A DNA stretch of 63,054 bases, counting the filler, from Octopus bimaculoides (Eukaryota): the NCBI RefSeq assembly GCF_001194135.2. It is 8 parts of 7 records of this genome, joined end to end, with 100 filler letters (N's around TTAATTAATTAA, not from the genome) between each part and the next. Parts side by side here need not be neighbours in the genome. Positions count along the whole stretch, not along the records: positions 20,006 to 31,337 come from NC_068990.1; 7 more parts are not named here. One strand, written 5' to 3'. The translations under genes and the position numbers were made by a program. Every line of letters starts with the position of its first letter. Within the stretch, counting starts at the first letter, position 1. This document shows positions 19,765-31,436 of this stretch, piece by piece. Under the pieces are notes generated by a model. That model did no database searches. It worked only from the letters and a program-made list of their open reading frames with translations, and was not told the DNA's origin.

Positions 19765-20282
19765 CCATCATCATCACCATCATCATCACTTTTAAATACC
19801 GTTACTGAGAATATACTTTTGAAATTATCTATATAACGAGAAGTTTTTATGTGTACCTAAGTTTGAGAGACTTAGAATAACGCTTCTACTTATGGTGTTT
19901 CATGCNNNNNNNNNNNNNNNNNNNNNNNNNNNNNNNNNNNNNNNNNNNNTTAATTAATTAANNNNNNNNNNNNNNNNNNNNNNNNNNNNNNNNNNNNNNN
20001 NNNNNTATACACACACATACACATGCACATATCGGTACAGGACGTCACCAACGGTTCAAACAACATGGAATACGTAAACAACGAGAAAATAATGGAAAAC
20101 AGGACAAGTAACACAGAGAAAAGACCCTTCATCAGTTGTCGGCTATCTATCTATCTACTCCTCATTTCGAGCATTCAGCGACAAAATATATGTGTGTATG
20201 TATGCATATATATACGCACACATATTAATGTTTATTTTGAAGTGTAGTTATATACAAAAACAGTATACTCAAATGAATTATA

Positions 20283-20815
20283 GGGTCACTCAACGCGTTT
20301 GAGTATCTTCATGTTTATGGAGGCAGGCGCTATTTGTTGGTATTTGCTCAGGTTCTTTGGGCAACCCTTCGAGCAGTGTTCCAGTCAGTCTCCATCTCTG
20401 CGAGATACTTCCTCATCCGCCCTGACCCTGTGACATGTGGTCAACATGAGCCGTCATGCTAACCAAATCCTCAAGAAGAGAAAACTACACGCCGGATCTA
20501 ACTTGGGAAATCGAGCCACATGACCAAACAGTCTGAGTTGGTTCTCCCGAATCATCCAAGTAACAGGATGCACTCCAGTTTCTAAGTAGAGTCGTTAGTT
20601 GAATACAAAATCTGACCAATGGTAACCAATAGTTCTACAAAGCGAATTAGTATTAAAGGAGTCCAAGCGGTTCCTGAGGGTCCTGGACAATCTCCACGTC
20701 CCGCAATTATAGATTAAGATAGGGAGGACCAGAAAGAATACTCTCTCTCTCTCTCTCTCTCTAACAGAAACATGCGCGTGCGCGCGGATTCGGCATATTC
20801 GTCGAAAACGTATTG
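20283..20815 (-). mobile_element. RTE-clade LINE ORF2 C-terminal fragment interrupted by (GA)n
   Basis: LVLPILIYNCGTWRLSRTLRNRLDSFNTNSLCRTIGYHWSDFVFN*RL..ETG..RENQLRLFGHVARFPKLDPA. Confidence 0.85.
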
Positions 20816-21063
20816 AGTGGAAATGAAATTGATCGAAAGCATATTGGTCTATATACACAGGAAGATATGTTTGTAGAACAGAAGAGAAATACATGAAAAC
20901 TGAATTCATCTTTATACAACTGTTTCTAGTTTTAAAATAAGAACAAAATAATTTTGAAATGAAATATTTTTTTCATTTATTTTCAGGGTTTCTGTCATTT
21001 TTATAAGAAAATAAATAGAAACAGAAATACATCGTTAAAGTCTAATCTGAAAGGAAAAAAAAT

Positions 21064-21382
21064 TCATTAAGGTGTCTGCATATGACGCCATGATGATCTG
21101 CGTGTTGTGTCTTGACCAGGAAACGATCCACTCATATTACAAACTGATTTGTAGGATGGTGTACAATATTCAAAGCCGTAGTTTGCGCATTCGCAAACGG
21201 AAGTAGATGTCGACGGAAGTGTGTAAGGATTAGAGGAAGTCCACAGATAAAGCATAGCACAGATTTGGTTGGAAGAAATATTGCTCCCTGTCCCCCACCG
21301 CTCACATACTGTATTGTTCTTTTGTGGAGAGCATGCTGCGCCCACTGGTTGGAAGATGCGGCCACTTTTCTGGAACATTCGA
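21064..21382 (-). pseudogene. Decayed duplicate of the Brachyury-like terminal exon
   Basis: Colinear with 28213-28548 at roughly 80% identity by eye, including an exact 40-bp block ACGGAAGTAGATGTCGACGGAAGTGTGTAAGGATTAGAGG. Has a Trp-to-TGA change, a +1 shift, a compensated +1/-1 pair, an in-frame deletion of about 5 codons, and lacks the acceptor. Confidence 0.88.
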
Positions 21383-21732
21383 TCTTGATAGATCTTTTAA
21401 ACAATTTATTGTAATTTTATAATCAGAAGAAAATATTTTTCAAATGGAATATATTTTTAATTTTCCAAATAATAATCATTGCATTTTTTAAATTTATGTT
21501 TTTAATTATGTCTTTGAAAAATATAATTTTCACCTTTTCTTATATGAATGTTTTCGATCACGTTGTCTCTCGGTCAATATTCTTACGATCAATATGTTTT
21601 CGACTTATGGTTCTTAAATCAATATATATGTATGTATGTGCGTTCGAATATATGCATATAAATATCTGTCTATGTGCATATTTGTATGTATGTATGTATG
21701 TATGTATGTGTGTGTGTATGCATGTATGCATG

Positions 21733-21771
<39 letters not shown>

Positions 21772-22418
21772 ATATATATGTATGTATATATGTATGTATG
21801 TATGTATGNNNNNNNNNNNNNNNNNNNNNNNNNNNNNNNNNNNNNNNNNNNNNNNNNNNNNNNNNNNNNNNNNNNNNNNNNNNNNNNNNNNNNNNNNNNN
21901 NNNNNNNNNNNNNNNNNNNNNNNNNNNNNNNNNNNNNNNNNNNNNNNNNNNNNNNNNNNNNNNNNNNNNNNNNNNNNNNNNNNNNNNNNNNNNNNNNNNN
22001 NNNNNNNNNNNNNNNNNNNNNNNNNNNNNNNNNNNNNNNNNNNNNNNNNNNNNNNNNNNNNNNNNNNNNNNNNNNNNNNNNNNNNNNNNNNNNNNNNNNN
22101 NNNNNNNNNNNNNNNNNNNNNNNNNNNNNNNNNNNNNNNNNNNNNNNNNNNNNNNNNNNNNNNNNNNNNNNNNNNNNNNNNNNNNNNNNNNNNNNNNNNN
22201 NNNNNNNNNNNNNNNNNNNNNNNNNNNNNNNNNNNNNNNNNNNNNNNNNNNNNNNNNNNNNNNNNNNNNNNNNNNNNNNNNNNNNNNNNNNNNNNNNNNN
22301 NNNNNNNNNNNNNNNNNNNNNNNNNNNNNNNNNNNNNNNNNNNNNNNNNNNNNNNNNNNNNNNNNNNNNNNNTATTACCTAATCAAATAAACAGATTCGC
22401 ATATACATATACATACAT

Positions 22419-23516
22419 GCATACATACATACATACATACATACACATAAATATACATATACAAATACACACACACATATGTATCAATATACAGGCAACC
22501 TATATCGTTTCGGCTTACGTCTTGTTTGACTTTACATCGGTTTTCTGGTTTAAAAAAAAAATTTTTATGGTAACATTAAATATTTCAACTTAAAGCGGTC
22601 AATCCAACTTTACGTCGGTCTTAGTGAAAGCATTTAAAAAAAACACACCTAAAAACTAATACTAAAGTAGAAAATCTAATGAAATACATGTGAAAATATT
22701 TACAAATCATTTATTAAAACAGATATAAGCTAATAAATTGTTTTACAATGTTTTATCCTTGTCACACCAAAAGTTCAAGTAAAGATGCGTGTCTTGGAAA
22801 TAGTTAGCAACATAAGTTGAGGTATGCGTGTATATGTATTTATATAAACTCTACGGATGCTATGGAATGCATGGAAATTCCTGATGTATATCCAGCGCCA
22901 ATGTATAATGACATTAGGTAGTCAATAACTGTGGACGAGCTTTGCATGACATCCTACAAGGTTTTTACCCGAATCTTATTTAACTTATAAATACATATGC
23001 ATTCATACATCGAATGATATATATATATNNNNNNNNNNTACATACATACATACATACATACATACATACATGCAGGCATGCTTTCTCAACTTGCTTGCCC
23101 TCAACGTTATCACAAAGTCATGTGTGTGTCTCTCTTACTTTGAATTCGTGAATTCTTTAAATCTTTGGTTATTTTGTACCATAAGCACATAATATTCTAT
23201 AAAAAGTCATTCGTGCATGAACAATATTCTATTAACAAATACACACAAATTTATGCAATATTTTAACAACAAACTTTTCAATATTGTTACATACAGGAAT
23301 ATCCTTGTCTATTTTCATATAATATTCCGCATACATACATACATACATACATACACATAAATATACATATACAAATACACACACACATATGTATCAATAT
23401 ACAGGCAACCTATATCGTTTCGGCTTACGTCTTGTTTGACTTTACATCGGTTTTCTGGTTTAAAAAAAAAATTTTTATGGTAACATTAAATATTTCAACT
23501 TAAAGCGGTCAATCCA
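22419..23516 (+). repeat. Identical 188-bp direct repeat (22419-22606 = 23329-23516)
   Basis: Base-for-base identical, offset 910 bp; the second copy ends at an N gap. Confidence 0.9.
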
Positions 23517-24377
23517 NNNNNNNNNNNNNNNNNNNNNNNNNNNNNNNNNNNNNNNNNNNNNNNNNNNNNNNNNNNNNNNNNNNNNNNNNNNNNNNNNNNN
23601 NNNNNNNNNNNNNNNNNNNNNNNNNNNNNNNNNNNNNNNNNNNNNNNNNNNNNNNNNNNNNNNNNNNNNNNNNNNNNNNNNNNNNNNNNNNNNNNNNNNN
23701 NNNNNNNNNNNNNNNNNNNNNNNNNNNNNNNNNNNNNNNNNNNNNNNNNNNNNNNNNNNNNNNNNNNNNNNNNNNNNNNNNNNNNNNNNNNNNNNNNNNN
23801 NNNNNNNNNNNNNNNNNNNNNNNNNNNNNNNNNNNNNNNNNNNNNNNNNNNNNNNNNNNNNNNNNNNNNNNNNNNNNNNNNNNNNNNNNNNNNNNNNNNN
23901 NNNNNNNNNNNNNNNNNNNNNNNNNNNNNNNNNNNNNNNNNNNNNNNNNNNNNNNNNNNNNNNNNNNNNNNNNNNNNNNNNNNNNNNNNNNNNNNNNNNN
24001 NNNNNNNNNNNNNNNNNNNNNNNNNNNNNNNNNNNNNNNNNNNNNNNNNNNNNNNNNNNNNNNNNNNNNNNNNNNNNNNNNNNNNNNNNNNNNNNNNNNN
24101 NNNNNNNNNNNNNNNNNNNNNNNNNNNNNNNNNNNNNNNNNNNNNNNNNNNNNNNNNNNNNNNNNNNNNNNNNNNNNNNNNNNNNNNNNNNNNNNNNNNN
24201 NNNNNNNNNNNNNNNNNNNNNNNNNNNNNNNNNNNNNNNNNNNNNNNNNNNNNNNNNNNNNNNNNNNNNNNNNNNNNNNNNNNNNNNNNNNNNNNNNNNN
24301 NNNNNNNNNNNNNNNNNNNNNNNNNNNNNNNNNNNNNNNNNNNNNNNNNNNNNNNNNNNNNNAGATAGATAGATAGA

Positions 24378-24584
24378 TATAGTCGATAAGAAAATGGAGG
24401 AAAAATAACAATAAGTGTTTTTTGCGCTAGGAAACCATTATATATATTTTCTTCAGCATGGTACACAGAAACAATCGTAAACTCACTCTCACTCTCACCT
24501 TTCTTAACTAATTAGATAATGGTTTCCTAGCGCAAAAGAGACACTTCTTATTGTTATTTTCTCTCCATTTTCTTATCGTCTATA
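24378..24584. mobile_element. MITE-like inverted-repeat element
   Basis: Arms 24378-24441 and 24516-24584 are imperfect reverse complements (e.g. GCGCTAGGAAACCATTAT / ATAATGGTTTCCTAGCGC). Confidence 0.6.
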
Positions 24585-24750
24585 TAAATTAAACTACGGT
24601 TTACCCGCCAAATTACCTGCTACCGCATACCTTTTACCAAGGACTATACCTACTGAGGTAATTACCAGGCGTGCTTTTGAATATATCTATCCCTTACAGG
24701 CTTTAAACACCTCTAACTTATACCTGCACAAGACACACACACACGCACGC

Positions 24751-24786
<36 letters not shown>

Positions 24787-24953
24787 ATATAAATATATAA
24801 ACTTACAGAGTAGCAATTTTATAGTGAGTATTGGCAAGTTTAATACCTCGAAATGACAATGTCATTTCATCCTAGACAGGAATTCTCTCGGACTGCCCGA
24901 CGCCGTAAACTTTCCAACACACACACACACATACACACAAACATATATATATA

Positions 24954-25219
24954 CAGTGGCAGACTGGCCAGGTTGCCAGCCTGCCCGATGGCAAGTGGGC
25001 CCCTGCGCCATTAGAATCCATATATGGGGGCCCGTGTTAGTATCTAAGGGGCCCATCCCCTCAAGTTTGAGAATTTTTTATTCACTCCTGGAAGAATGCA
25101 TTAATTATTTCAACCTGGCTGTGTTTGTAGACAGTTCGAAAGAATACTTTTAAGAAAAAAAAATTAAATGATAACAATGTAGTTGCGGGTGGCAACCAAT
25201 ATTTTTAGACCCAGTCCGC

Positions 25220-25224
<5 letters not shown>
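24954..25224. mobile_element. Non-autonomous hAT-type MITE (271 bp)
   Basis: TIRs CAGTGGCAGACTGG / CCAGTCCGCCACTA; flanked by 8-bp TATATATA on both sides (inside a TA tract, so the TSD is only suggestive). Confidence 0.75.
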
Positions 25225-25263
<39 letters not shown>

Positions 25264-25449
25264 GATTACGATAGACAAGTTTATATCATTAGTTCCTATG
25301 TCCGTGCATAGATAAAAAAAAGATTTTACATCAACACAGTCGTGACTTCATTATAACAATGTTTGAAAGGAAAGCTGTGCCATATATACGCACACAAAAA
25401 TATTCATTCGTATATGTATATATGCATATTCATATGTGTGTGTATATAT

Positions 25450-25523
<74 letters not shown>

Positions 25524-26259
25524 ATGCATGTATGTATGTATAAACAGGAGAATAAGCTCGTATATGTCATTGAAACCTTTGTCAATTGTATGAGAGAGGT
25601 TTATGCAAATGAAATAATTTGCTTCAACCACAGATCGAACTCTGATCATGGATTCTCAGCATCCATCAAAGAAATCACCTCAGTCTTTGCAGTAATCACC
25701 ATTTTAACCAACGGAATTGTTCCATGTTTTTGTTTTGAGTTTTTAATGGTGACAGTCAAGAGCGTTTTAGATTTTCCGATAAGGCCAGTAGCAGCATTCC
25801 TCGTAGCATTTGCAGTAGTAGTAGTAGTAGTAGTAGCAGCAGCAGCAATAGTAGCAACGCCTATTGCTATAGTTGACGGCGCTTGTGGCCAAAGTTTGTT
25901 TATTATTTTCATTTTTTGCTTTTATTTATTGTTCTTATTTGTCGTCGTTGCTTTTGGCGTGGATGTATTTCTTATTGAAATTATTGTTGTTGTTGTTGTT
26001 GTTGTTGAAGTTTCTTTCTCCCTTTCTCTTTCTCCTTTTCTCTCTCATGTATTTTCTACACACTATCCTCCAGTCTTCTTCCCCAACCCTTTATATTTTT
26101 ATTTAGTTTTTGTTTTTTTTGTTTTTTTTTACTTTTCTTTACAATTTTAAATTTTCTTCAGTTATTTCATAAATATCAATTCGGTAAAACAAAACAAACA
26201 AAAAAAACATTTTCCCAGAGAATTTTTGGTAAATATCCGAATAGTTTGGTACCATGGCC

Positions 26260-26294
<35 letters not shown>

Positions 26295-27350
26295 AGGTTT
26301 AGGTGCGATGCAGATTTACCGCAGTACACTGTGAACACTGAATATTAAATGAGCGCTTCTAAAGTTTGCAGTTCAGAGTTCAAATTATTCCGTCGTTATA
26401 TCACGAGGAAGAAATACTTCAGGATGACTTTCGTTGGTGTTTCATGCGGAGTAGGGGTGGGGGAGGGGATATTTGCCAACGTGACTTCCCTCGGCATCTC
26501 ATGGAGAAGAACGCTCTTGGATGACTTCTCTTAGAATATATCAAAGAGAAGAATGTCGACCAGGCTGACTTGCACAACAAATTGTCTTTGGCTTTCTTTT
26601 CTTTGTTAGCGCCTTCGTACCGCTAAACATGGTTGTTTTCATTCGTTTTAGCACCCGTTCCTTGTACATAAACCCCACCCAGTTCCTATCCATCAGGTTT
26701 TTCTGCAATTGTAAGGTTGTAGTGTTAGAGTTTTGTTCTTTTGCCAAAATATATGGAGAAATACATTGCAAATAAGAAGTGTCGATTATTGTTTTAGTGG
26801 TGGGGGGAATCCCCAGCAATTTGTACAATATATCTTAGATAGGAATGAAACTTCAAAATCAGCTGCTTCATTTGGTGCCAGCTCATTTGTTAATCCATAA
26901 TTCTATAATTCTATTAATCCATAATTAATAGATTCTTAATTACCAAAGACTGCAATATTTGTAATATCTGAACCCCTTTCTAAAAATTCCTTTATTCTTT
27001 TGAAAAAAAAAATCGTTAATAAATTATTGGGGGACGTAACTAAATGTTGAAAGACATTTAGTCCGGGATTTTTTGTACAGAGACCAAGAAGCGTGAAGCA
27101 ACGTAGGATGTTGCTGTTTTTATTTTTTTTCTTGAAGAATTAAGGTGTAAGGAAGTAAAGAGATTGTAAGCAGAGAAAAAAAAAAAGAAAAAAAAAACAA
27201 AAAGGAAATCCGGTGCAGATTGTGACTCCATTATTATCAGTTTAAATAAATCATGATACAATGGGCCTACATGTATGTATGTATGTATGTATGTATGTAT
27301 GTATGTATGTATGTATGTATGTGTGTATGTATGTATTTATCCAAACTGAG

Positions 27351-27511
27351 GGAGTGGAACAGGTAAAATGTACGCTACATATGTTTCTTAACTAGCTGAA
27401 ACTGATGATGCAATTGTTCAGAGTTGTTAAGAGTTCATTGCATAACTATTCCAGCGTGAGATTCAGCTAGTTAAGAAACATATGTAGCGCACACTTAACC
27501 TGCTCCATTCC
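27351..27511. repeat. Fold-back element with 50-bp arms (MITE-like)
   Basis: 27351-27400 and 27462-27511 are reverse complements; the core CGCTACATATGTTTCTTAACTAGCTGAA (28 bp) is perfect. Confidence 0.85.
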
Positions 27512-28212
27512 CGCCATTTAGAGTTTTAGTCGCATTTTTAGCAGCATTTGTTGCTAACAGTGAGCTTTATAGGAATTATCAGCTTATCGAATTTCTTCCC
27601 AACTTCGATGAGAGAAAAAGTGTGTAACTCGCGATATTAATAAATTGTTCTTGTATCTTTTCGTATTCTCTCCACTTTTTGATCTCTATACCAGCCGCTT
27701 ACTGCTTGAAACTTACAAACTTCTTACACTCGGATCCCCGGGTTACACACACACACACACACACACGCACATGAAGACTGAGGAAACGGAATATCAATGA
27801 ATTGGCCTCAAATTGGCGAATGGTATCGATTCGTTTCCTTGCCACAACTGTTAGCAGTAATAAACTCTATTGTAAAACCTTGCTCCCTCTCTGATGAAAA
27901 ACAGTTCCAACAAGTTATGGATTTGCTCTTTCCACGAAGATTACTTTCAAAAGAAACATATTATTATTTCTACTGTTACTACTACTCCTTCTCCCACTAC
28001 AGCTACCAGTTGTTTACAAACACCTCAACTAACGCAGAAACAGTAAATCGATAAGAAGCAAGACTAAATTGATGAGGGTAGCAGCAAGAGAGAGAGAGAG
28101 GTAGAGAGAGAGGGAGAAGAGGAAAGGAAACTGAAGGAATCCTCCCAATTTAGTTTTTCAGTGTTTCTTTACAATTTTTTGTCTGTTGTTTCCAAATTGA
28201 AAATCAGTAATT

Positions 28213-28583
28213 TCATAAAGATGTCGGCATATGACCCCACGATGATCTGCCTGTTGTGTCGCGGCCAGGAAATGATCCACTCATATCACAAGTCGATTCG
28301 TATGATGGTTGTACAGTGTTCATAGCCGTGGTTTGCACATTCGGAACGGAAGTAGATGTCGACGGAAGTGTGTAAGGATTAGAGGAAGTTCGCAGATAAG
28401 GCATAGCACAGCTTTGGTTGGAAGAAATATTGCTCATTGGGCCTCCAACCCACATACTATACTGTCCTTGTGTGGCAGAAGCATTAGTGGAGAGCATGCT
28501 GTGGCCACTGGTTGGAAGATGGGGCCAGTTCTCTGGAAGATTCAACATAGGGAGGTTTGATGTGACATCTCTCGAGTAACCGC
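28213..28583 (-). CDS. Bra: Terminal coding exon of a Brachyury (T) gene
   Basis: Polypyrimidine tract + TTTAG acceptor (phase 1) at 28584-28585, then GYSRDVTSNLPMLNLPENWPHLPTSGHSMLSTNASATQGQYSMWVGG...MPYLRTS...GRSSWGHMPTSL*. Aligns by eye to vertebrate T C-terminus YSDNSPACLSMLQSHDNWSSLGMPAHPSML..NAS..SQYPSLW..FFRGS..SWTPVSPPSM (recalled from memory), with a matching exon boundary. T-box exons not seen. Confidence 0.75.
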
Positions 28584-28688
28584 CTAAATAGACAAACAAA
28601 AGGAAAAAAAAACTAAATAAAATAATAAACCAACAGCAACAAAAATAAAATTAGAAAAATTTCTCATGTTAAAATCTGTTATCTGTTA

Positions 28689-29075
28689 TTTCTTTCAGGG
28701 ATTTGAGTGCGGCCATGCTGGGGCACTGCCTTGAAGAAATTTTAGCCGGATGTATCGACCCCGGTACTTATTTCTTTCTTTTACCAAGTCTGATATTTGT
28801 AGTATTGGGCCCCTATTAACGAACCGCTAGGTTACGGGGAAGAAAACACACCAACACCGTCGTCAGGCGGTGGTGGGGGACAAGCACAGACACAAAGACA
28901 CGCATATACATACACTTATACGACAGGATTCTTTCAGTTTCCGTCTACGAAATCTACTCAGGATGCTTTGCTTGTCCTGGGGCTATGGAAGATATTTGTC
29001 CAAGGAGCCACGAAGTGAGATTGAACCCAGAACCATATGGTTGGGAAGCAAGCTTTTGGACTCCACAGACACGCC
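28689..29075 (-). mobile_element. tRNA-derived SINE family B
   Basis: Reverse complement of 45225-45609 type sequence (AAGCTTGCTTCCCAACCATATGGTTCTGGGTTCAATC...CAGCATGGCCGCA). Confidence 0.85.
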
Positions 29076-29107
29076 AAAATTTTATTGAAATTTAAAATAT
29101 TTGTGCT

Positions 29108-29157
<50 letters not shown>

Positions 29158-29292
29158 TTTTAGGAGTTATTTGTGTGCGCTTGTTTGCCTGTACGTGTGT
29201 ATTTGCGTGAGAGTGCGTGTGATTGCATGTGTGCTTAAGTATACATACATACATACATACTACATACATACATACATACATACAAATAGATT

Positions 29293-29344
<52 letters not shown>

Positions 29345-30224
29345 TACATATATATTTATACATGTATATACATATATACGTTTGTACGTACACGTGTGTA
29401 TATGCGTTTGTGAGAGAAGGAGAGAAAGCAAAACAGTGAAAGAGAGAGAGAAAGAAAAATTAAGAGAGAGAGAGAGAGAGAGAGCGACAGACAGACTAAA
29501 GGGGAGATGTGTGTTTTTGTTGTTTTATGGTGAGATGAAAGCAAAATAGGATCGGGTTAAGTAAAAAGCATCAAAAAGGGTGAATGAAAGAAATGGATGA
29601 ATGGAGAAGGAAGACCTCCCACGCTTCAACAGGGTCGGCCGATTTCTTCAAATATTTTACTGTGGCTCCGCTGCGACACATACACACACGCACCACCACC
29701 ACCACCACCACCACCGCTACCGCCCTCATCACCGCCGCCGCCGCCACCACCCAGTCACTAACAAGTGAGCACGAACATACACACCGACCAGTTACAGACA
29801 GGTAAATGCGTACACACACACACACACTCACTCACACATACACATACACAGCAGTCAGTTACAAACATACACACGCGCGCTCACACACATACACACACCA
29901 GCCAGTTACAGATAATTATACACAAATTTACAGGTACAAAGCTACCCACACAGGCACATTTGTATCAACAGGTACCCTATATTGAGACAAATATACTTGG
30001 CGAGAGAGAGAGAGAGAGAGAGAGAGGACAGAGACAAACGGATACGCACGCGCACGCACACACACATACGCACTCGCGAGCGCTGACAGATAATACCCAT
30101 TATGTGTGTAGATACAGACTACCTCACATCAATTTACAGAACCAAGCAAAAGTGTATGAGAAGGAATGTGTATGTGTGTGTGTGGGGGCGGGGGGACTGT
30201 GCGTTTCTAGCTGTGCGTCTCTAG

Positions 30225-30564
30225 CTGCCGAAGTTGAACGAATTGGGCTACGAAACTCTACCTCATCTGCCATACTCACCAGACCCCTCGCCTACCGACT
30301 AGCACTTTTACAAGCGTCTTGACAACTTCCTGTGTGAGAAATGCTTCAAAGACCAAGACGATGCCAAACACGTCTCCAACGACTCCATCGCCACCAGAAT
30401 GCAGGGTTTTTATGCTACTGGCATAAATAAGCTTGTTTCGCGTTGGTAAAAGTGTGTTGATTCTGATGGTGTTTATTTCGATTAATAGAGTTTTGTTTGA
30501 GCCGAGATATACGCATCTGAATTTAAAGGTTAAAAACCGCAAGAACTTTCTTGACAACCTAATA
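30225..30564 (+). mobile_element. Mariner transposon 3' fragment with right TIR and TA
   Basis: KLNELGYETLPHLPYSPDPSPTD*HFYKRLDNFL..FYATGINKLVSRW*KCVDSDGVYFD* (YSPDL motif); TIR AAAACCGCAAGAACTTTCTTGACAACCTAA + TA, Hsmar1-like. Confidence 0.92.
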
Positions 30565-30739
30565 TATATCCACACCGAAGACGGATCCAGATTTACAGTA
30601 ATGTTTATGTGAATCCACTGCTGTTGCATGTTCTTGACTTTTTTTTGCACGCTACATCTGCCAACATTACAACTATTAGGTAATTCCGACCCCCAGAAAC
30701 GGCTGTCGGACCTGAAATACCATGCCCTTTCCCTTTAAT

Positions 30740-31128
30740 ATTCTGTTTCTTTGGTACTGCGTGTAATCATTTATAATTTATTTATAGAACACGGAGTAAA
30801 GACAAGAACATGATATACATTGGTGAGGCGTCTAGAAGCATTGCGGAGAGACTAAATGGACATCTGAGACAATATGACGACAAAAAACCAGTCCTCCATA
30901 CTCTACCAACATGCCAAAGACCAACATGGAAGCACACTGGGTCGACTTGCCATTCGCATTTTATCCAAGCACCCAAAGGACCCATCACTCAGACAAATAC
31001 ATGAGTACGTCCTCATAAATGAAACATCCCCAATACTAAATAGGAGATATACGTAGAAGGTAGTGATACCCCAATACCCACAGTTTATACATACACAGGT
31101 AGATTTGTTAGTAGGCTGTTATGTAGGC

Positions 31129-31168
<40 letters not shown>

Positions 31169-31310
31169 CTCGGTCATAATGTCTTACGTTTAAAATGATT
31201 TCCATACATTTCCCTGAGGAGAAGTTTACATTTTTAACATCGCAGATTCCTATGGATCGCATAAATTGTAATTCTTCGAAACATATGTCGGAATAAAGTA
31301 TGCAGTTATA
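30740..31310 (+). mobile_element. Penelope-like element 3' fragment (GIY-YIG and terminal region)
   Basis: IYIGEASRSIAERLNGHL / QSSILYQHAKDQHG..IRILSKHPKDPSLRQIHEYVLINETSPILNRR, followed by a hammerhead motif and AATAAA. Confidence 0.8.
31209..31293 (+). ncRNA. Type I hammerhead ribozyme with intact core
   Basis: TTCC-CTGAGGA-GAAG...CTTC-GAA-AC-atat-GT-C-GGAA: all core positions canonical, GUC cleavage triplet at 31287-31289, palindromic stem III ACATATGT. Confidence 0.75.
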
Positions 31311-31436
31311 ACATGCGTTTTCTCCATTCCTTAAATTNNNNNNNNNNNNNNNNNNNNNNNNNNNNNNNNNNNNNNNNNNNNTTAATTAATTAANNNNNNN
31401 NNNNNNNNNNNNNNNNNNNNNNNNNNNNNNNNNNNN

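What the first reader, a model, noticed from the sequence alone, without database searches (positions are those of the whole stretch)
21064..21382. Decayed duplicate of the Brachyury-like last exon about 7 kb downstream, same strand
Seen: a colinear copy of 28213-28548 with an exact 40-bp core. In the parental frame it has a Trp-to-stop change and a +1 shift; further on a +1/-1 pair restores frame, and one frame stays open for 103 codons (21067-21378), ending SGSFPGQDTTRRSSWRHMQTP*. The native acceptor is missing and the flanks show no clear homology. Known: Brachyury is usually single-copy in spiralians and its C-terminal half holds the transactivation/repression regions. Inference: most likely the pseudo-exon of an old partial tandem duplication; less likely an alternative terminal exon or relic of a second Bra gene. 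This is the most unusual host-gene structure in the window.
Basis: partly seen in the sequence, partly recalled or inferred. Interest (0 to 1): 0.72.

Follow-up and report, generated by a model that had tools for sequence, protein, structure and literature searches.

The report
Dead fragment copy of Brachyury exon
About 0.4 kb of the last coding exon of the developmental gene Brachyury was copied once into a site a few kb downstream, where it has decayed like junk DNA, so it is an ordinary gene-fragment pseudogene, not a second gene or a working alternative exon.

Summary
The duplication is real. Window 21060-21380 (copy A) matches 28209-28543 (copy B) in the same orientation (blastn E 1e-81, 45 mismatches, 4 gaps, 45-bp exact core). 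The coding strand is minus.

B is a genuine Brachyury terminal exon. It has a conserved acceptor, matches the C-terminus of mollusc T-box/Brachyury proteins, and shows dN/dS 0.02 against a 98%-identical orthologue.

A is dead. It lacks the acceptor and the first ~13 codons, and has a Trp-to-stop change, three single-base frameshifts and a 15-nt deletion. Four residues invariant across molluscs are replaced. Its 36 private substitutions are spread 13/12/11 over codon positions (omega about 1).

A is not the remnant of a larger tandem duplication. A and B flanks share nothing, while orthologous B flanks of the same neutral age still align over 0.45 kb on each side.

A is bracketed by a 72-nt direct repeat (80% identity, z = 15) that is about as diverged as A is from B. 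Both junctions show 4-5 nt microhomology.

Best reading: one short local templated insertion with a target-site duplication, into an AT-rich foldback site. Function is unlikely.

Caveat: A and B lie on different contigs joined across N gaps.

The parts
21060..21380 (-). Copy A: decayed copy of the coding part of the Brachyury terminal exon, from about codon 14 to 4 nt past the stop
   Evidence: blastn E 1e-81 to 28209-28543; alignments; stop, frameshifts and deletion; omega about 1
20975..21059 (-). Probable continuation of copy A into the parental 3'UTR (about 60 nt of B, with about 30-37 extra nt in A); tentative
   Evidence: 20975-21002 aligns colinearly with 28148-28178; score 35, reached by 7/1000 shuffles; junction view
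21067..21378 (-). It is a mosaic of an alternative frame of the parent (5' third) and the parental frame (the rest, apart from the short stretch between the +1/-1 frameshift pair)
   Evidence: parental-frame parts have 3 syn / 16 nonsyn private changes, omega 1.75, not different from neutral; a stop-free run this long occurs in 10.7% of simulations
20908..20978 (.). Left copy of the direct repeat bracketing A (target-site duplication candidate)
   Evidence: 72-nt alignment with 21392-21463: 57 matches, 14 mismatches, JC distance 0.23; score 67 vs dinucleotide shuffles 22.3 +/- 3.0, max 37, 0/2000
21392..21463 (.). Right copy of the direct repeat. It may start at 21377 (ATTC) with an 11-nt stutter GATCTTGATAG
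20801..20839 (+). Left arm of an inverted repeat outside the direct repeats; carries the motif TCGAAARCRTATTGR twice
   Evidence: 16-nt tips are 15/16 complementary; 10/1000 dinucleotide shuffles reach the arm score
21567..21604 (-). Right arm of the inverted repeat, with the same motif twice on the other strand
   Evidence: the joined empty site (334 nt) folds with the tips paired, z -2.35
28213..28583 (-). Copy B: functional terminal coding exon of Brachyury, stop included (TGA at 28215-28213); acceptor AG at 28585-28584 after a pyrimidine tract
   Evidence: ORF and translation; acceptor conserved in L001/L002; dS 0.27, dN 0.004 vs the orthologue; homology to T-box protein P0009 and to Elysia 'brachyury protein' P0010
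28148..28545 (-). Inferred donor segment within and just after the B exon that was copied to make A
   Evidence: limits of homology
21809..22372 (.). First of three assembly gaps (N runs) between the A contig and the B contig
   Evidence: a 188-bp perfect repeat at gap edges 22419-22606 / 23329-23516 (D7)

Best explanation
Copy A is a dead-on-arrival fragment of the Brachyury terminal exon. One event copied about 0.33-0.4 kb (most of the exon's coding part and probably the first ~60 nt of 3'UTR). The copy lacks the splice acceptor and the first ~13 codons. It was inserted in the same orientation a few kb downstream of the gene, into an AT-rich site that looks like a small foldback (MITE-like) element, and the event duplicated about 72-78 bp of the target.

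The likeliest route is DNA-templated repair or replication with template switching at short microhomologies (MMBIR/FoSTeS-like, or synthesis-dependent repair of a staggered break). Since then A has evolved neutrally and has no coding function.

Shown: the homology and its limits, the disabling changes, the neutral substitution pattern, the flanking direct repeat and its matching divergence, and the selective constraint on B.

Inferred: that the direct repeat is a target duplication made by the same event, that the template was DNA rather than RNA, and that the foldback site played a role.
For: 1. Homology stops sharply. Nothing outside 21060-21380 (plus perhaps 20975-21059) matches the B region. 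Orthologous B flanks at the same synonymous distance remain alignable over about 0.45 kb on each side, E 1e-62 and 1e-65.
2. The 72-nt direct repeat 20908-20978 / 21392-21463 abuts both ends of the insert. z = 15, 0/2000 shuffles. Its JC distance of 0.23 matches dS(A-B) of 0.27, as expected if one event made both.
3. At the junctions, target, donor and product share ATTT on the left and ATTC on the right, with an 11-nt stutter on the right.
4. Neutral decay. There are 36 A-private changes at codon positions 13/12/11, and omega is 0.9-1.0. The B and orthologue branches have 13 synonymous to 1 nonsynonymous change (Fisher p 1e-5).
5. Disabling changes: the Trp-to-stop change, three 1-nt indels, a 15-nt deletion and a stop one codon early. 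Invariant residues W45, P62, R65 and R108 are replaced.
6. B is under strong constraint (omega 0.02) and is a Brachyury C-terminus.
7. Donor and copy lie on one scaffold in the same orientation, which fits a local template switch.
Against: - The junctions were read from sequences that have each drifted about 13%, and 4-5 nt of microhomology in AT-rich DNA is weak evidence.
- A 72-78 bp target duplication is long for most insertion mechanisms, and it could be a pre-existing local repeat.
- The fragment lies within one exon, so DNA and RNA templates cannot be told apart.
- The linkage and distance of A and B depend on scaffolding across three N gaps in a stretch with a redundant 188-bp contig overlap.
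- No empty site in a relative could be found, and no expression data could be consulted.
- The ATG-initiated 103-codon ORF arises in only 0.26% of neutral simulations. That statistic was chosen after seeing the ORF.
Confidence: 0.68

Rival explanations
1. RNA-mediated origin. A LINE reverse transcriptase copied a piece of Brachyury (pre-)mRNA, primed internally at the A-rich stretch about 60 nt into the 3'UTR and truncated at the 5' end. It inserted the copy with a long target-site duplication.
For: The insert is bracketed by direct repeats, as retrocopies are. In the sense orientation both repeat copies start A-rich, and the insert ends at an A-rich part of the 3'UTR. LINE-like and Penelope-like relics lie in the piece.
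Against: There is no poly(A) tail; the A run at the 3' junction is present in both repeat copies, so it belongs to the target. A 72-78 bp duplication is long for a retrocopy. Landing within about 7 kb of the parent, in the same orientation, in a large genome would be a striking coincidence for a trans-acting RNA route. No exon-exon junction is included that could prove an RNA template.
Confidence: 0.12
2. Transposon capture (Pack-type transduplication). A is cargo inside a roughly 0.8-kb non-autonomous DNA transposon bounded by the inverted repeats 20801-20839 / 21567-21604.
For: The inverted arms have 15/16 complementary tips, and the 15-nt motif occurs twice on each side in opposite orientation (4 matches in the window vs 0.21 expected). 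The arm score is reached by only 10/1000 shuffles and by no real-sequence control. The joined flanks fold tip to tip, z -2.35.
Against: The motif was derived from these same arms, so the count is partly circular. No target-site duplication is visible outside the arms. The direct repeat lying immediately around A, inside the arms, is not predicted by capture; it is predicted by insertion into a pre-existing element. No other copy of the element could be looked for.
Confidence: 0.08
3. Remnant of a larger tandem duplication (a second Brachyury gene or a long 3' segment) whose other parts have decayed or been deleted.
For: Same orientation and close to the parent. The interval contains 1.4 kb of unresolved N that could hide sequence.
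Against: There is no flank homology at a divergence where orthologous flanks are still 72-83% identical. There is no T-box or other Brachyury match in 20006-31337 apart from A and B. The boundaries are sharp and bracketed by a direct repeat of matching age.
Confidence: 0.06
4. A is functional, either as an alternative terminal exon or as an independent small ORF. As an exon it would use the cryptic acceptor ttccag|AA at 21371-21370, which is in phase with the native acceptor and would give a Brachyury isoform ending ...KWPHLPTSGRSMLSTKEQYSM*. As a small ORF it would be the 103-codon frame.
For: A phase-compatible AG exists. The ATG-to-stop ORF of 103 codons appears in only 0.26% of neutral simulations. 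Omega is 0.41 in the first 25 codons (4 syn / 7 nonsyn; too few changes to be significant).
Against: Overall omega is about 1, and it is 1.75 in the parts of the ORF that keep the parental frame. Four mollusc-invariant residues are lost. There is no pyrimidine tract comparable to the native acceptor. A stop-free run of this length occurs in 10.7% of simulations. No homologue of the ORF was found (an insensitive search).
Confidence: 0.03
5. Assembly artefact. The A contig is misplaced in the scaffold, so the 'downstream duplicate' arrangement is not real (the paralogous fragment itself would still exist somewhere).
For: A sits on a 1.8-kb contig bounded by N. The interval holds three gaps and a 188-bp 100% repeat at contig ends that indicates mis-ordered or redundant contigs.
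Against: 14% divergence with indels and a neutral pattern cannot be a haplotig or a read-error copy of B. Scaffolders usually place small contigs locally.
Confidence: 0.05

Closest known systems
Duplicated (unprocessed) gene-fragment pseudogenes / pseudo-exons
   Same: A partial copy of one exon close to the parent gene. It carries nonsense and frameshift changes, has lost its splice signal and evolves neutrally.
   Different: Only about 0.4 kb was copied, with no intron or long flank. It is bracketed by a 72-nt direct repeat, so it is an insertion and not a piece of a segmental duplication.
[quoted passage not shown]
   Same: A short stretch copied from a nearby donor in cis, 4-5 nt of shared bases at both junctions, a small stutter at one junction, and duplication of the local target sequence.
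   Different: This is an old germline event read through about 13% drift per copy, so the junctions are not exact. The insert (about 400 bp) and the flanking duplication (about 75 bp) are larger than the few-tens-of-bp insertions usually catalogued. The mechanism itself is not testable here.
LINE-mediated retrocopies (processed pseudogenes, 5'-truncated)
   Same: A gene fragment flanked by direct repeats, 5'-truncated, ending in the 3'UTR. LINE relics are nearby.
   Different: There is no poly(A) tail, the target duplication is unusually long, and the insertion lies next to its own parent gene.
Pack-MULE / Pack-type transduplication (own knowledge: gene fragments carried between the terminal inverted repeats of non-autonomous DNA transposons, mainly in plants)
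   Same: A gene fragment lying between inverted repeats that carry repeated subterminal motifs, in a unit of about 0.8 kb.
   Different: No target-site duplication outside the arms. A direct repeat lies immediately around the cargo. No evidence of other copies.

Membership tests
Brachyury (T-box) terminal coding exon - copy B | Sequence homology to the C-terminal region of Brachyury proteins | tested here: met
   phmmer over 1.84 billion representatives gave 14 hits. P0009 has a full T-box (PF00907, E 5.8e-74) and matches at its residues 332-430 (E 6e-11; BLASTP 8e-19). P0010 is named 'brachyury protein [Elysia marginata]'. Nineteen columns are invariant across 10 sequences.
Brachyury (T-box) terminal coding exon - copy B | Lies in the same gene as T-box exons | not testable with these tools
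   No T-box match in 20006-31337. The upstream exons must lie beyond 31337, outside the piece.
Brachyury (T-box) terminal coding exon - copy B | Splice acceptor and purifying selection | tested here: met
   The acceptor ...tctatttag|GC is conserved in L001/L002. dN/dS is 0.02 over the exon while the flanks are only 72-83% identical.
Gene-fragment pseudogene (pseudo-exon) - copy A | Homology to a functional parent plus disabling mutations | tested here: met
   E 1e-81. W to stop, three 1-nt indels, a 15-nt deletion, and missing acceptor and first ~13 codons.
Gene-fragment pseudogene (pseudo-exon) - copy A | Neutral substitution pattern | tested here: met
   Private changes fall 13/12/11 by codon position, and omega is 0.9-1.0. 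This differs from the B and orthologue branches at p 1e-5.
Gene-fragment pseudogene (pseudo-exon) - copy A | Not spliced or expressed as coding sequence | not testable with these tools
   No transcript data for this species could be reached. Exact-protein look-ups of the A and B ORFs found no contigs.
Tandem segmental / whole-gene duplication | Homology extends into introns and flanks, or other exons are also duplicated | tested here: not met
   No flank homology with word size 7. No further Brachyury matches. Orthologous flanks of equal age are readily aligned.
Templated insertion by template switching (MMBIR/FoSTeS-like) | Insert copied from a nearby donor and bracketed by duplicated target sequence | tested here: met
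   Direct repeat 20908-20978 / 21392-21463, z = 15. Its divergence of 0.23 is close to dS(A-B) of 0.27. The donor is 7 kb away on the scaffold. The repeat was measured; that it is duplicated target sequence is an inference from its position and matching age.
Templated insertion by template switching (MMBIR/FoSTeS-like) | Microhomology at both junctions | tested here: inconclusive
   ATTT on the left and ATTC on the right are shared by target, donor and product. The DNA is AT-rich and decayed, so this could arise by chance.
Templated insertion by template switching (MMBIR/FoSTeS-like) | Empty site (a single repeat copy, no insert) in a relative or ancestor | not testable with these tools
   Only 1.2-1.4 kb contigs of the B orthologue were retrievable. 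The metagenome scan found nothing.
LINE-mediated retrocopy | Poly(A) tail at the 3' end, inside the target-site duplication | tested here: not met
   The A run at the 3' junction is part of both repeat copies.
LINE-mediated retrocopy | Loss of introns (an exon-exon junction) | not testable with these tools
   The fragment lies within a single exon.
Pack-type transposon cargo | Terminal inverted repeats | tested here: inconclusive
   38-nt arms with 15/16 tips and the motif twice per side. Fold z is only -2.35.
Pack-type transposon cargo | Target-site duplication outside the inverted repeats, and multiple genomic copies | tested here: not met
   The flanks ...gcatattc|GTCGAAAAC and GTTTTCGAC|ttatggtt share no duplication. 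Copy number could not be tested, because the host genome is not searchable here.

The most novel reading that the evidence does not exclude
A ~0.32-kb foldback (MITE-like) element downstream of Brachyury acquired a piece of the gene's terminal exon, and the resulting ~0.8-kb IR-bounded unit is (or was) mobile. That would be a Pack-type gene-fragment capture in a cephalopod, a phenomenon documented mainly in plants. A less likely variant is that the captured ATG-initiated 103-codon ORF is expressed.
Probability: 0.07. Interest if true: 0.45.

Novelty: new member of a known kind. Interest (0 to 1): 0.17.

Why it matters
The main value is for annotation. The copy should not be scored as a second Brachyury gene, an alternative C-terminal exon or evidence of a tandem gene duplication, so Brachyury stays effectively single-copy in this lineage, as PMC6389317 reports for spiralians. 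It is also a tidy natural example of a sub-kilobase local templated insertion with a long target duplication in a mollusc genome. Its age can be read three independent ways: A against B, the two repeat copies against each other, and the species divergence. Beyond that it changes nothing about Brachyury biology.

Tried and rejected
- Pfam on the translations of B and of the A ORF: no family. The C-terminal half of Brachyury has no model.
- Word-index homology search with B: only the 98% orthologue, even at E up to 10. With the A ORF: no candidate. That search missed even the B orthologue, which shares a 15-residue stretch with A, so it says nothing about A orthologues.
- Exact-protein look-ups of the A ORFs and of two versions of the B ORF: nothing on record. 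No same-species contigs could be used to close the gaps or confirm linkage.
- JGI metagenome scan for relatives of the exon: none.
- Paper search for the run accessions of the orthologue, to learn its species: none.
- A downstream duplicate in another mollusc (L003, 10 kb after its terminal exon): none.
- Rfam and tRNA scans of the piece: nothing.
- A suspected stop-to-Trp change in a relative (P0015) proved to be a gene-caller code artefact; the DNA has TGA.
- High-copy repeat: rejected as far as testable. There are two copies in the piece, and every homologue found in the large libraries looks like a Brachyury C-terminus of another species.
- Haplotig: rejected because of the 14% divergence with indels.
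- Order of the duplication and the species split: unresolved. A shares 9 variable sites with B and 5 with the orthologue.

Full report
OBSERVATION. The piece (20006-31337) contains two colinear copies in the same orientation. MAFFT aligns 21040-21400 with 28190-28570 at 88% mean column identity. The repeat finder reports three blocks at offsets 7149/7163 (D9-D11). A sensitive blastn (word 7) of the A contig against the B contig gives one significant hit, 21060-21380 vs 28209-28543, with 45 mismatches, 4 gap openings and E 1.1e-81. Every other hit is microsatellite noise. The longest exact run is 45 bp, 21196-21240 = 28345-28389. The coding strand is minus. In B's frame, A has TGG to TGA at a conserved Trp, a +1 shift, then a +1/-1 pair, a 15-nt in-frame deletion and a stop one codon early. 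One frame stays open for 103 codons (21067-21378).

WHAT B IS. B is the ORF 28213-28599 on the minus strand. A pyrimidine tract and AG at 28585-28584 define an exon 28583-28213 that begins inside a codon. A full HMMER scan of 1.84 billion representative proteins returned 14 hits. One is P0009, a 476-aa snail protein with a complete T-box (PF00907, E 5.8e-74) whose residues 332-430 match the exon (BLASTP 8e-19). Another is P0010, named 'brachyury protein [Elysia marginata]'. Nineteen alignment columns are invariant across ten sequences.

A 98%-identical orthologue (P0001) sits on short Logan contigs from three runs (L001, L002, L006). These contigs align with window 27756-29055. The exon is 94.6% identical with no gaps. 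The intron side and the 3' side are about 72% identical counting gaps, or 76% and 83% in aligned columns. Over the exon, dS = 0.27 and dN = 0.004, so omega is 0.02. B is therefore a working Brachyury terminal exon. No T-box exon lies in the piece, so the rest of the gene must be beyond 31337. PMC6389317 lists one Brachyury orthologue in Octopus bimaculoides and in most spiralians. I could not verify the species of the window.

WHAT A IS. I used the orthologue to sort substitutions onto branches. That gives 36 changes private to A, against 5 private to B and 9 private to the orthologue. The A-private changes fall 13/12/11 on codon positions 1/2/3, whereas 13 of the 14 B and orthologue changes are at third positions. 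On the parental codons the A changes are 8-9 synonymous and 26-27 nonsynonymous, against 70.7 synonymous and 232.3 nonsynonymous sites. That gives omega 0.9-1.0, which differs from the B and orthologue branches at Fisher p 1e-5. In the parts of the 103-codon ORF that keep the parental frame, omega is 1.75 (3 syn / 16 nonsyn), indistinguishable from neutral. Four residues invariant across molluscs are lost in A: W45 to stop, P62L, R65W and R108Q. In simulations of neutral decay of the B fragment, 10.7% keep a stop-free run at least as long as A's. An ATG-initiated ORF of 103 codons or more arises in 0.26%, but I chose that statistic after seeing the ORF. A is a neutrally evolving pseudo-exon.

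NOT A DECAYED LARGE DUPLICATION. Synonymous divergence between A and B (0.27) equals that between B and its orthologue (0.27). At that distance the orthologous flanks are still aligned by ordinary blastn over about 0.45 kb on each side, with E 1e-62 and 1e-65. If A had arisen with its flanks, they would be equally recognisable, yet nothing is found even with word size 7. On the 5' side the homology ends about 38 nt inside the exon, so the acceptor was never copied. On the 3' side it is clear to 4 nt past the stop. It probably continues weakly for about 60 nt of 3'UTR (20975-21002 vs 28148-28178, colinear, 7/1000 shuffles). So only 0.33-0.4 kb was copied.

ANATOMY OF THE INSERTION SITE. The two flanks of A share a direct repeat, 20908-20978 and 21392-21463. 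It has 57 matches, 14 mismatches and one gap. Its score is 67, against 22.3 +/- 3.0 (maximum 37) in 2000 dinucleotide shuffles. Its JC distance of 0.23 matches dS(A-B), which is what one event creating both would give. The repeat copies abut the two ends of the Brachyury-derived segment. At the left junction, target, donor and product share ATTT. At the right junction they share ATTC, followed by an 11-nt stutter (GATCTTGATAG) before the repeat resumes.

Outside the direct repeats lie inverted arms, 20801-20839 and 21567-21604. Their 16-nt tips are 15/16 complementary. The motif TCGAAARCRTATTGR occurs twice per side in opposite orientation: 4 matches in the window against 0.21 expected, although the motif was derived from these same arms. 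Joining the flanks with one repeat copy gives a 334-nt AT-rich unit that folds tip to tip, but only with z = -2.35.

My reading is that the target was a small foldback or MITE-like element. A break or stalled fork there was repaired by copying about 0.4 kb from the nearby exon through template switches at microhomology, and about 75 bp of the target was re-copied on return. The abstract of PMC8421209 describes MMBIR as polymerase template switching at microhomology that produces templated insertions. The anatomy is shown. The mechanism is inferred.

AGE. The A branch (36-39 changes in 303 sites, about 0.13) is about half of the interspecies dS. The event is therefore about as old as the split from the species behind SRR11869384/85/94. 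A shares 9 variable sites with B and 5 with the orthologue, which does not settle whether the event came before or after the split.

RIVALS.
- RNA-mediated retro-insertion fits the flanking repeats and the A-rich 3' end. It lacks a poly(A) tail, since the A run belongs to both repeat copies, and it would have to land beside its own parent.
- Transposon capture fits the inverted arms. It does not explain the direct repeat placed immediately around the cargo, and no target duplication is visible outside the arms.
- A functional alternative exon is conceivable through the in-phase cryptic AG at 21371-21370. It would stop after about 21 codons, and the sequence shows no constraint.
- A larger tandem duplication is disfavoured.
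- A high-copy repeat is not supported, because only Brachyury C-termini of other species were found. The host genome itself could not be searched.

CAVEATS. A lies on a 1.8-kb contig separated from B's contig by N runs (21809-22372, 23029-23038, 23517-24362). A 188-bp perfect repeat at the gap edges (22419-22606 = 23329-23516, D7) shows redundant or mis-ordered contigs. Spacing, and strictly even linkage, therefore depend on scaffolding. No same-species or A-orthologous contigs could be retrieved. Presence or absence in relatives, and expression, remain untested.

VERDICT. The 'old partial tandem duplication' is better described as a short local templated insertion with a target duplication. 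This is an ordinary kind of genomic debris and deserves low interest, apart from the clean anatomy of the event.

Noticed in passing
window 22419-22606 and 23329-23516: A 188-nt block is repeated at 100% identity, each copy next to a run of N (D7). The contig ends overlap, so the contigs between A and B are probably mis-ordered or redundant, and the A-B spacing of 7149 is unreliable.
   Followed up: partly
window ~30780-31056, + strand: A frame-shifted GIY-YIG nuclease domain fragment (Pfam PF20815 E 3e-5, PF01541 E 1.3e-4). It may be a relic of a Penelope-like element in the last Brachyury intron.
   Followed up: partly
window ~30230-30450, + strand: The translation '...LPHLPYSPDPSPTD*HFYKRLDNFL...GINKLVSRW' looks by eye like the C-terminal end of a mariner-type transposase with stops. 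Pfam gave no hit.
   Followed up: partly
window ~20260-20720, - strand: The translation '...LIYNCGTWRLSRTLRNRLDSF...LRLFGHVARFP...' looks by eye like the C-terminal part of a LINE reverse transcriptase, 5'-truncated near a (CT)n run, about 340 nt downstream of copy A on the same strand. Pfam gave no hit.
   Followed up: partly
window 27340-27418 / 27444-27522, and 24366-24444 / 24513-24596: Two hairpin-forming inverted repeats: 79-nt arms at 81%, and nested 50-nt and 30-nt arms at 84-90%. They look like MITE-type elements. The first lies about 0.7-0.9 kb downstream of the Brachyury stop codon.
   Followed up: no
window 28213-28245 (C-terminal codons of B), and alignment A4: All other mollusc relatives end in (S/A)WSPLTPPP[I/L/M]*. 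The window and its 98% relative end SSWGHMPTSL*. The terminal motif has therefore changed in this lineage, although the exon is under strong constraint.
   Followed up: no
L006 (SRR11869385), protein P0015: The database protein reads Trp in place of the stop and runs on into the 3'UTR. The contig has TGA, so this is a gene-caller genetic-code artefact and not a variant or an edit.
   Followed up: yes
window 28600-29055 vs L001: The intron sequence just upstream of the B acceptor, including a GC-richer block at about 28700-29060 that looks by eye like a SINE, aligns with the related species. It is therefore older than the species split. No tRNA or Rfam match.
   Followed up: partly
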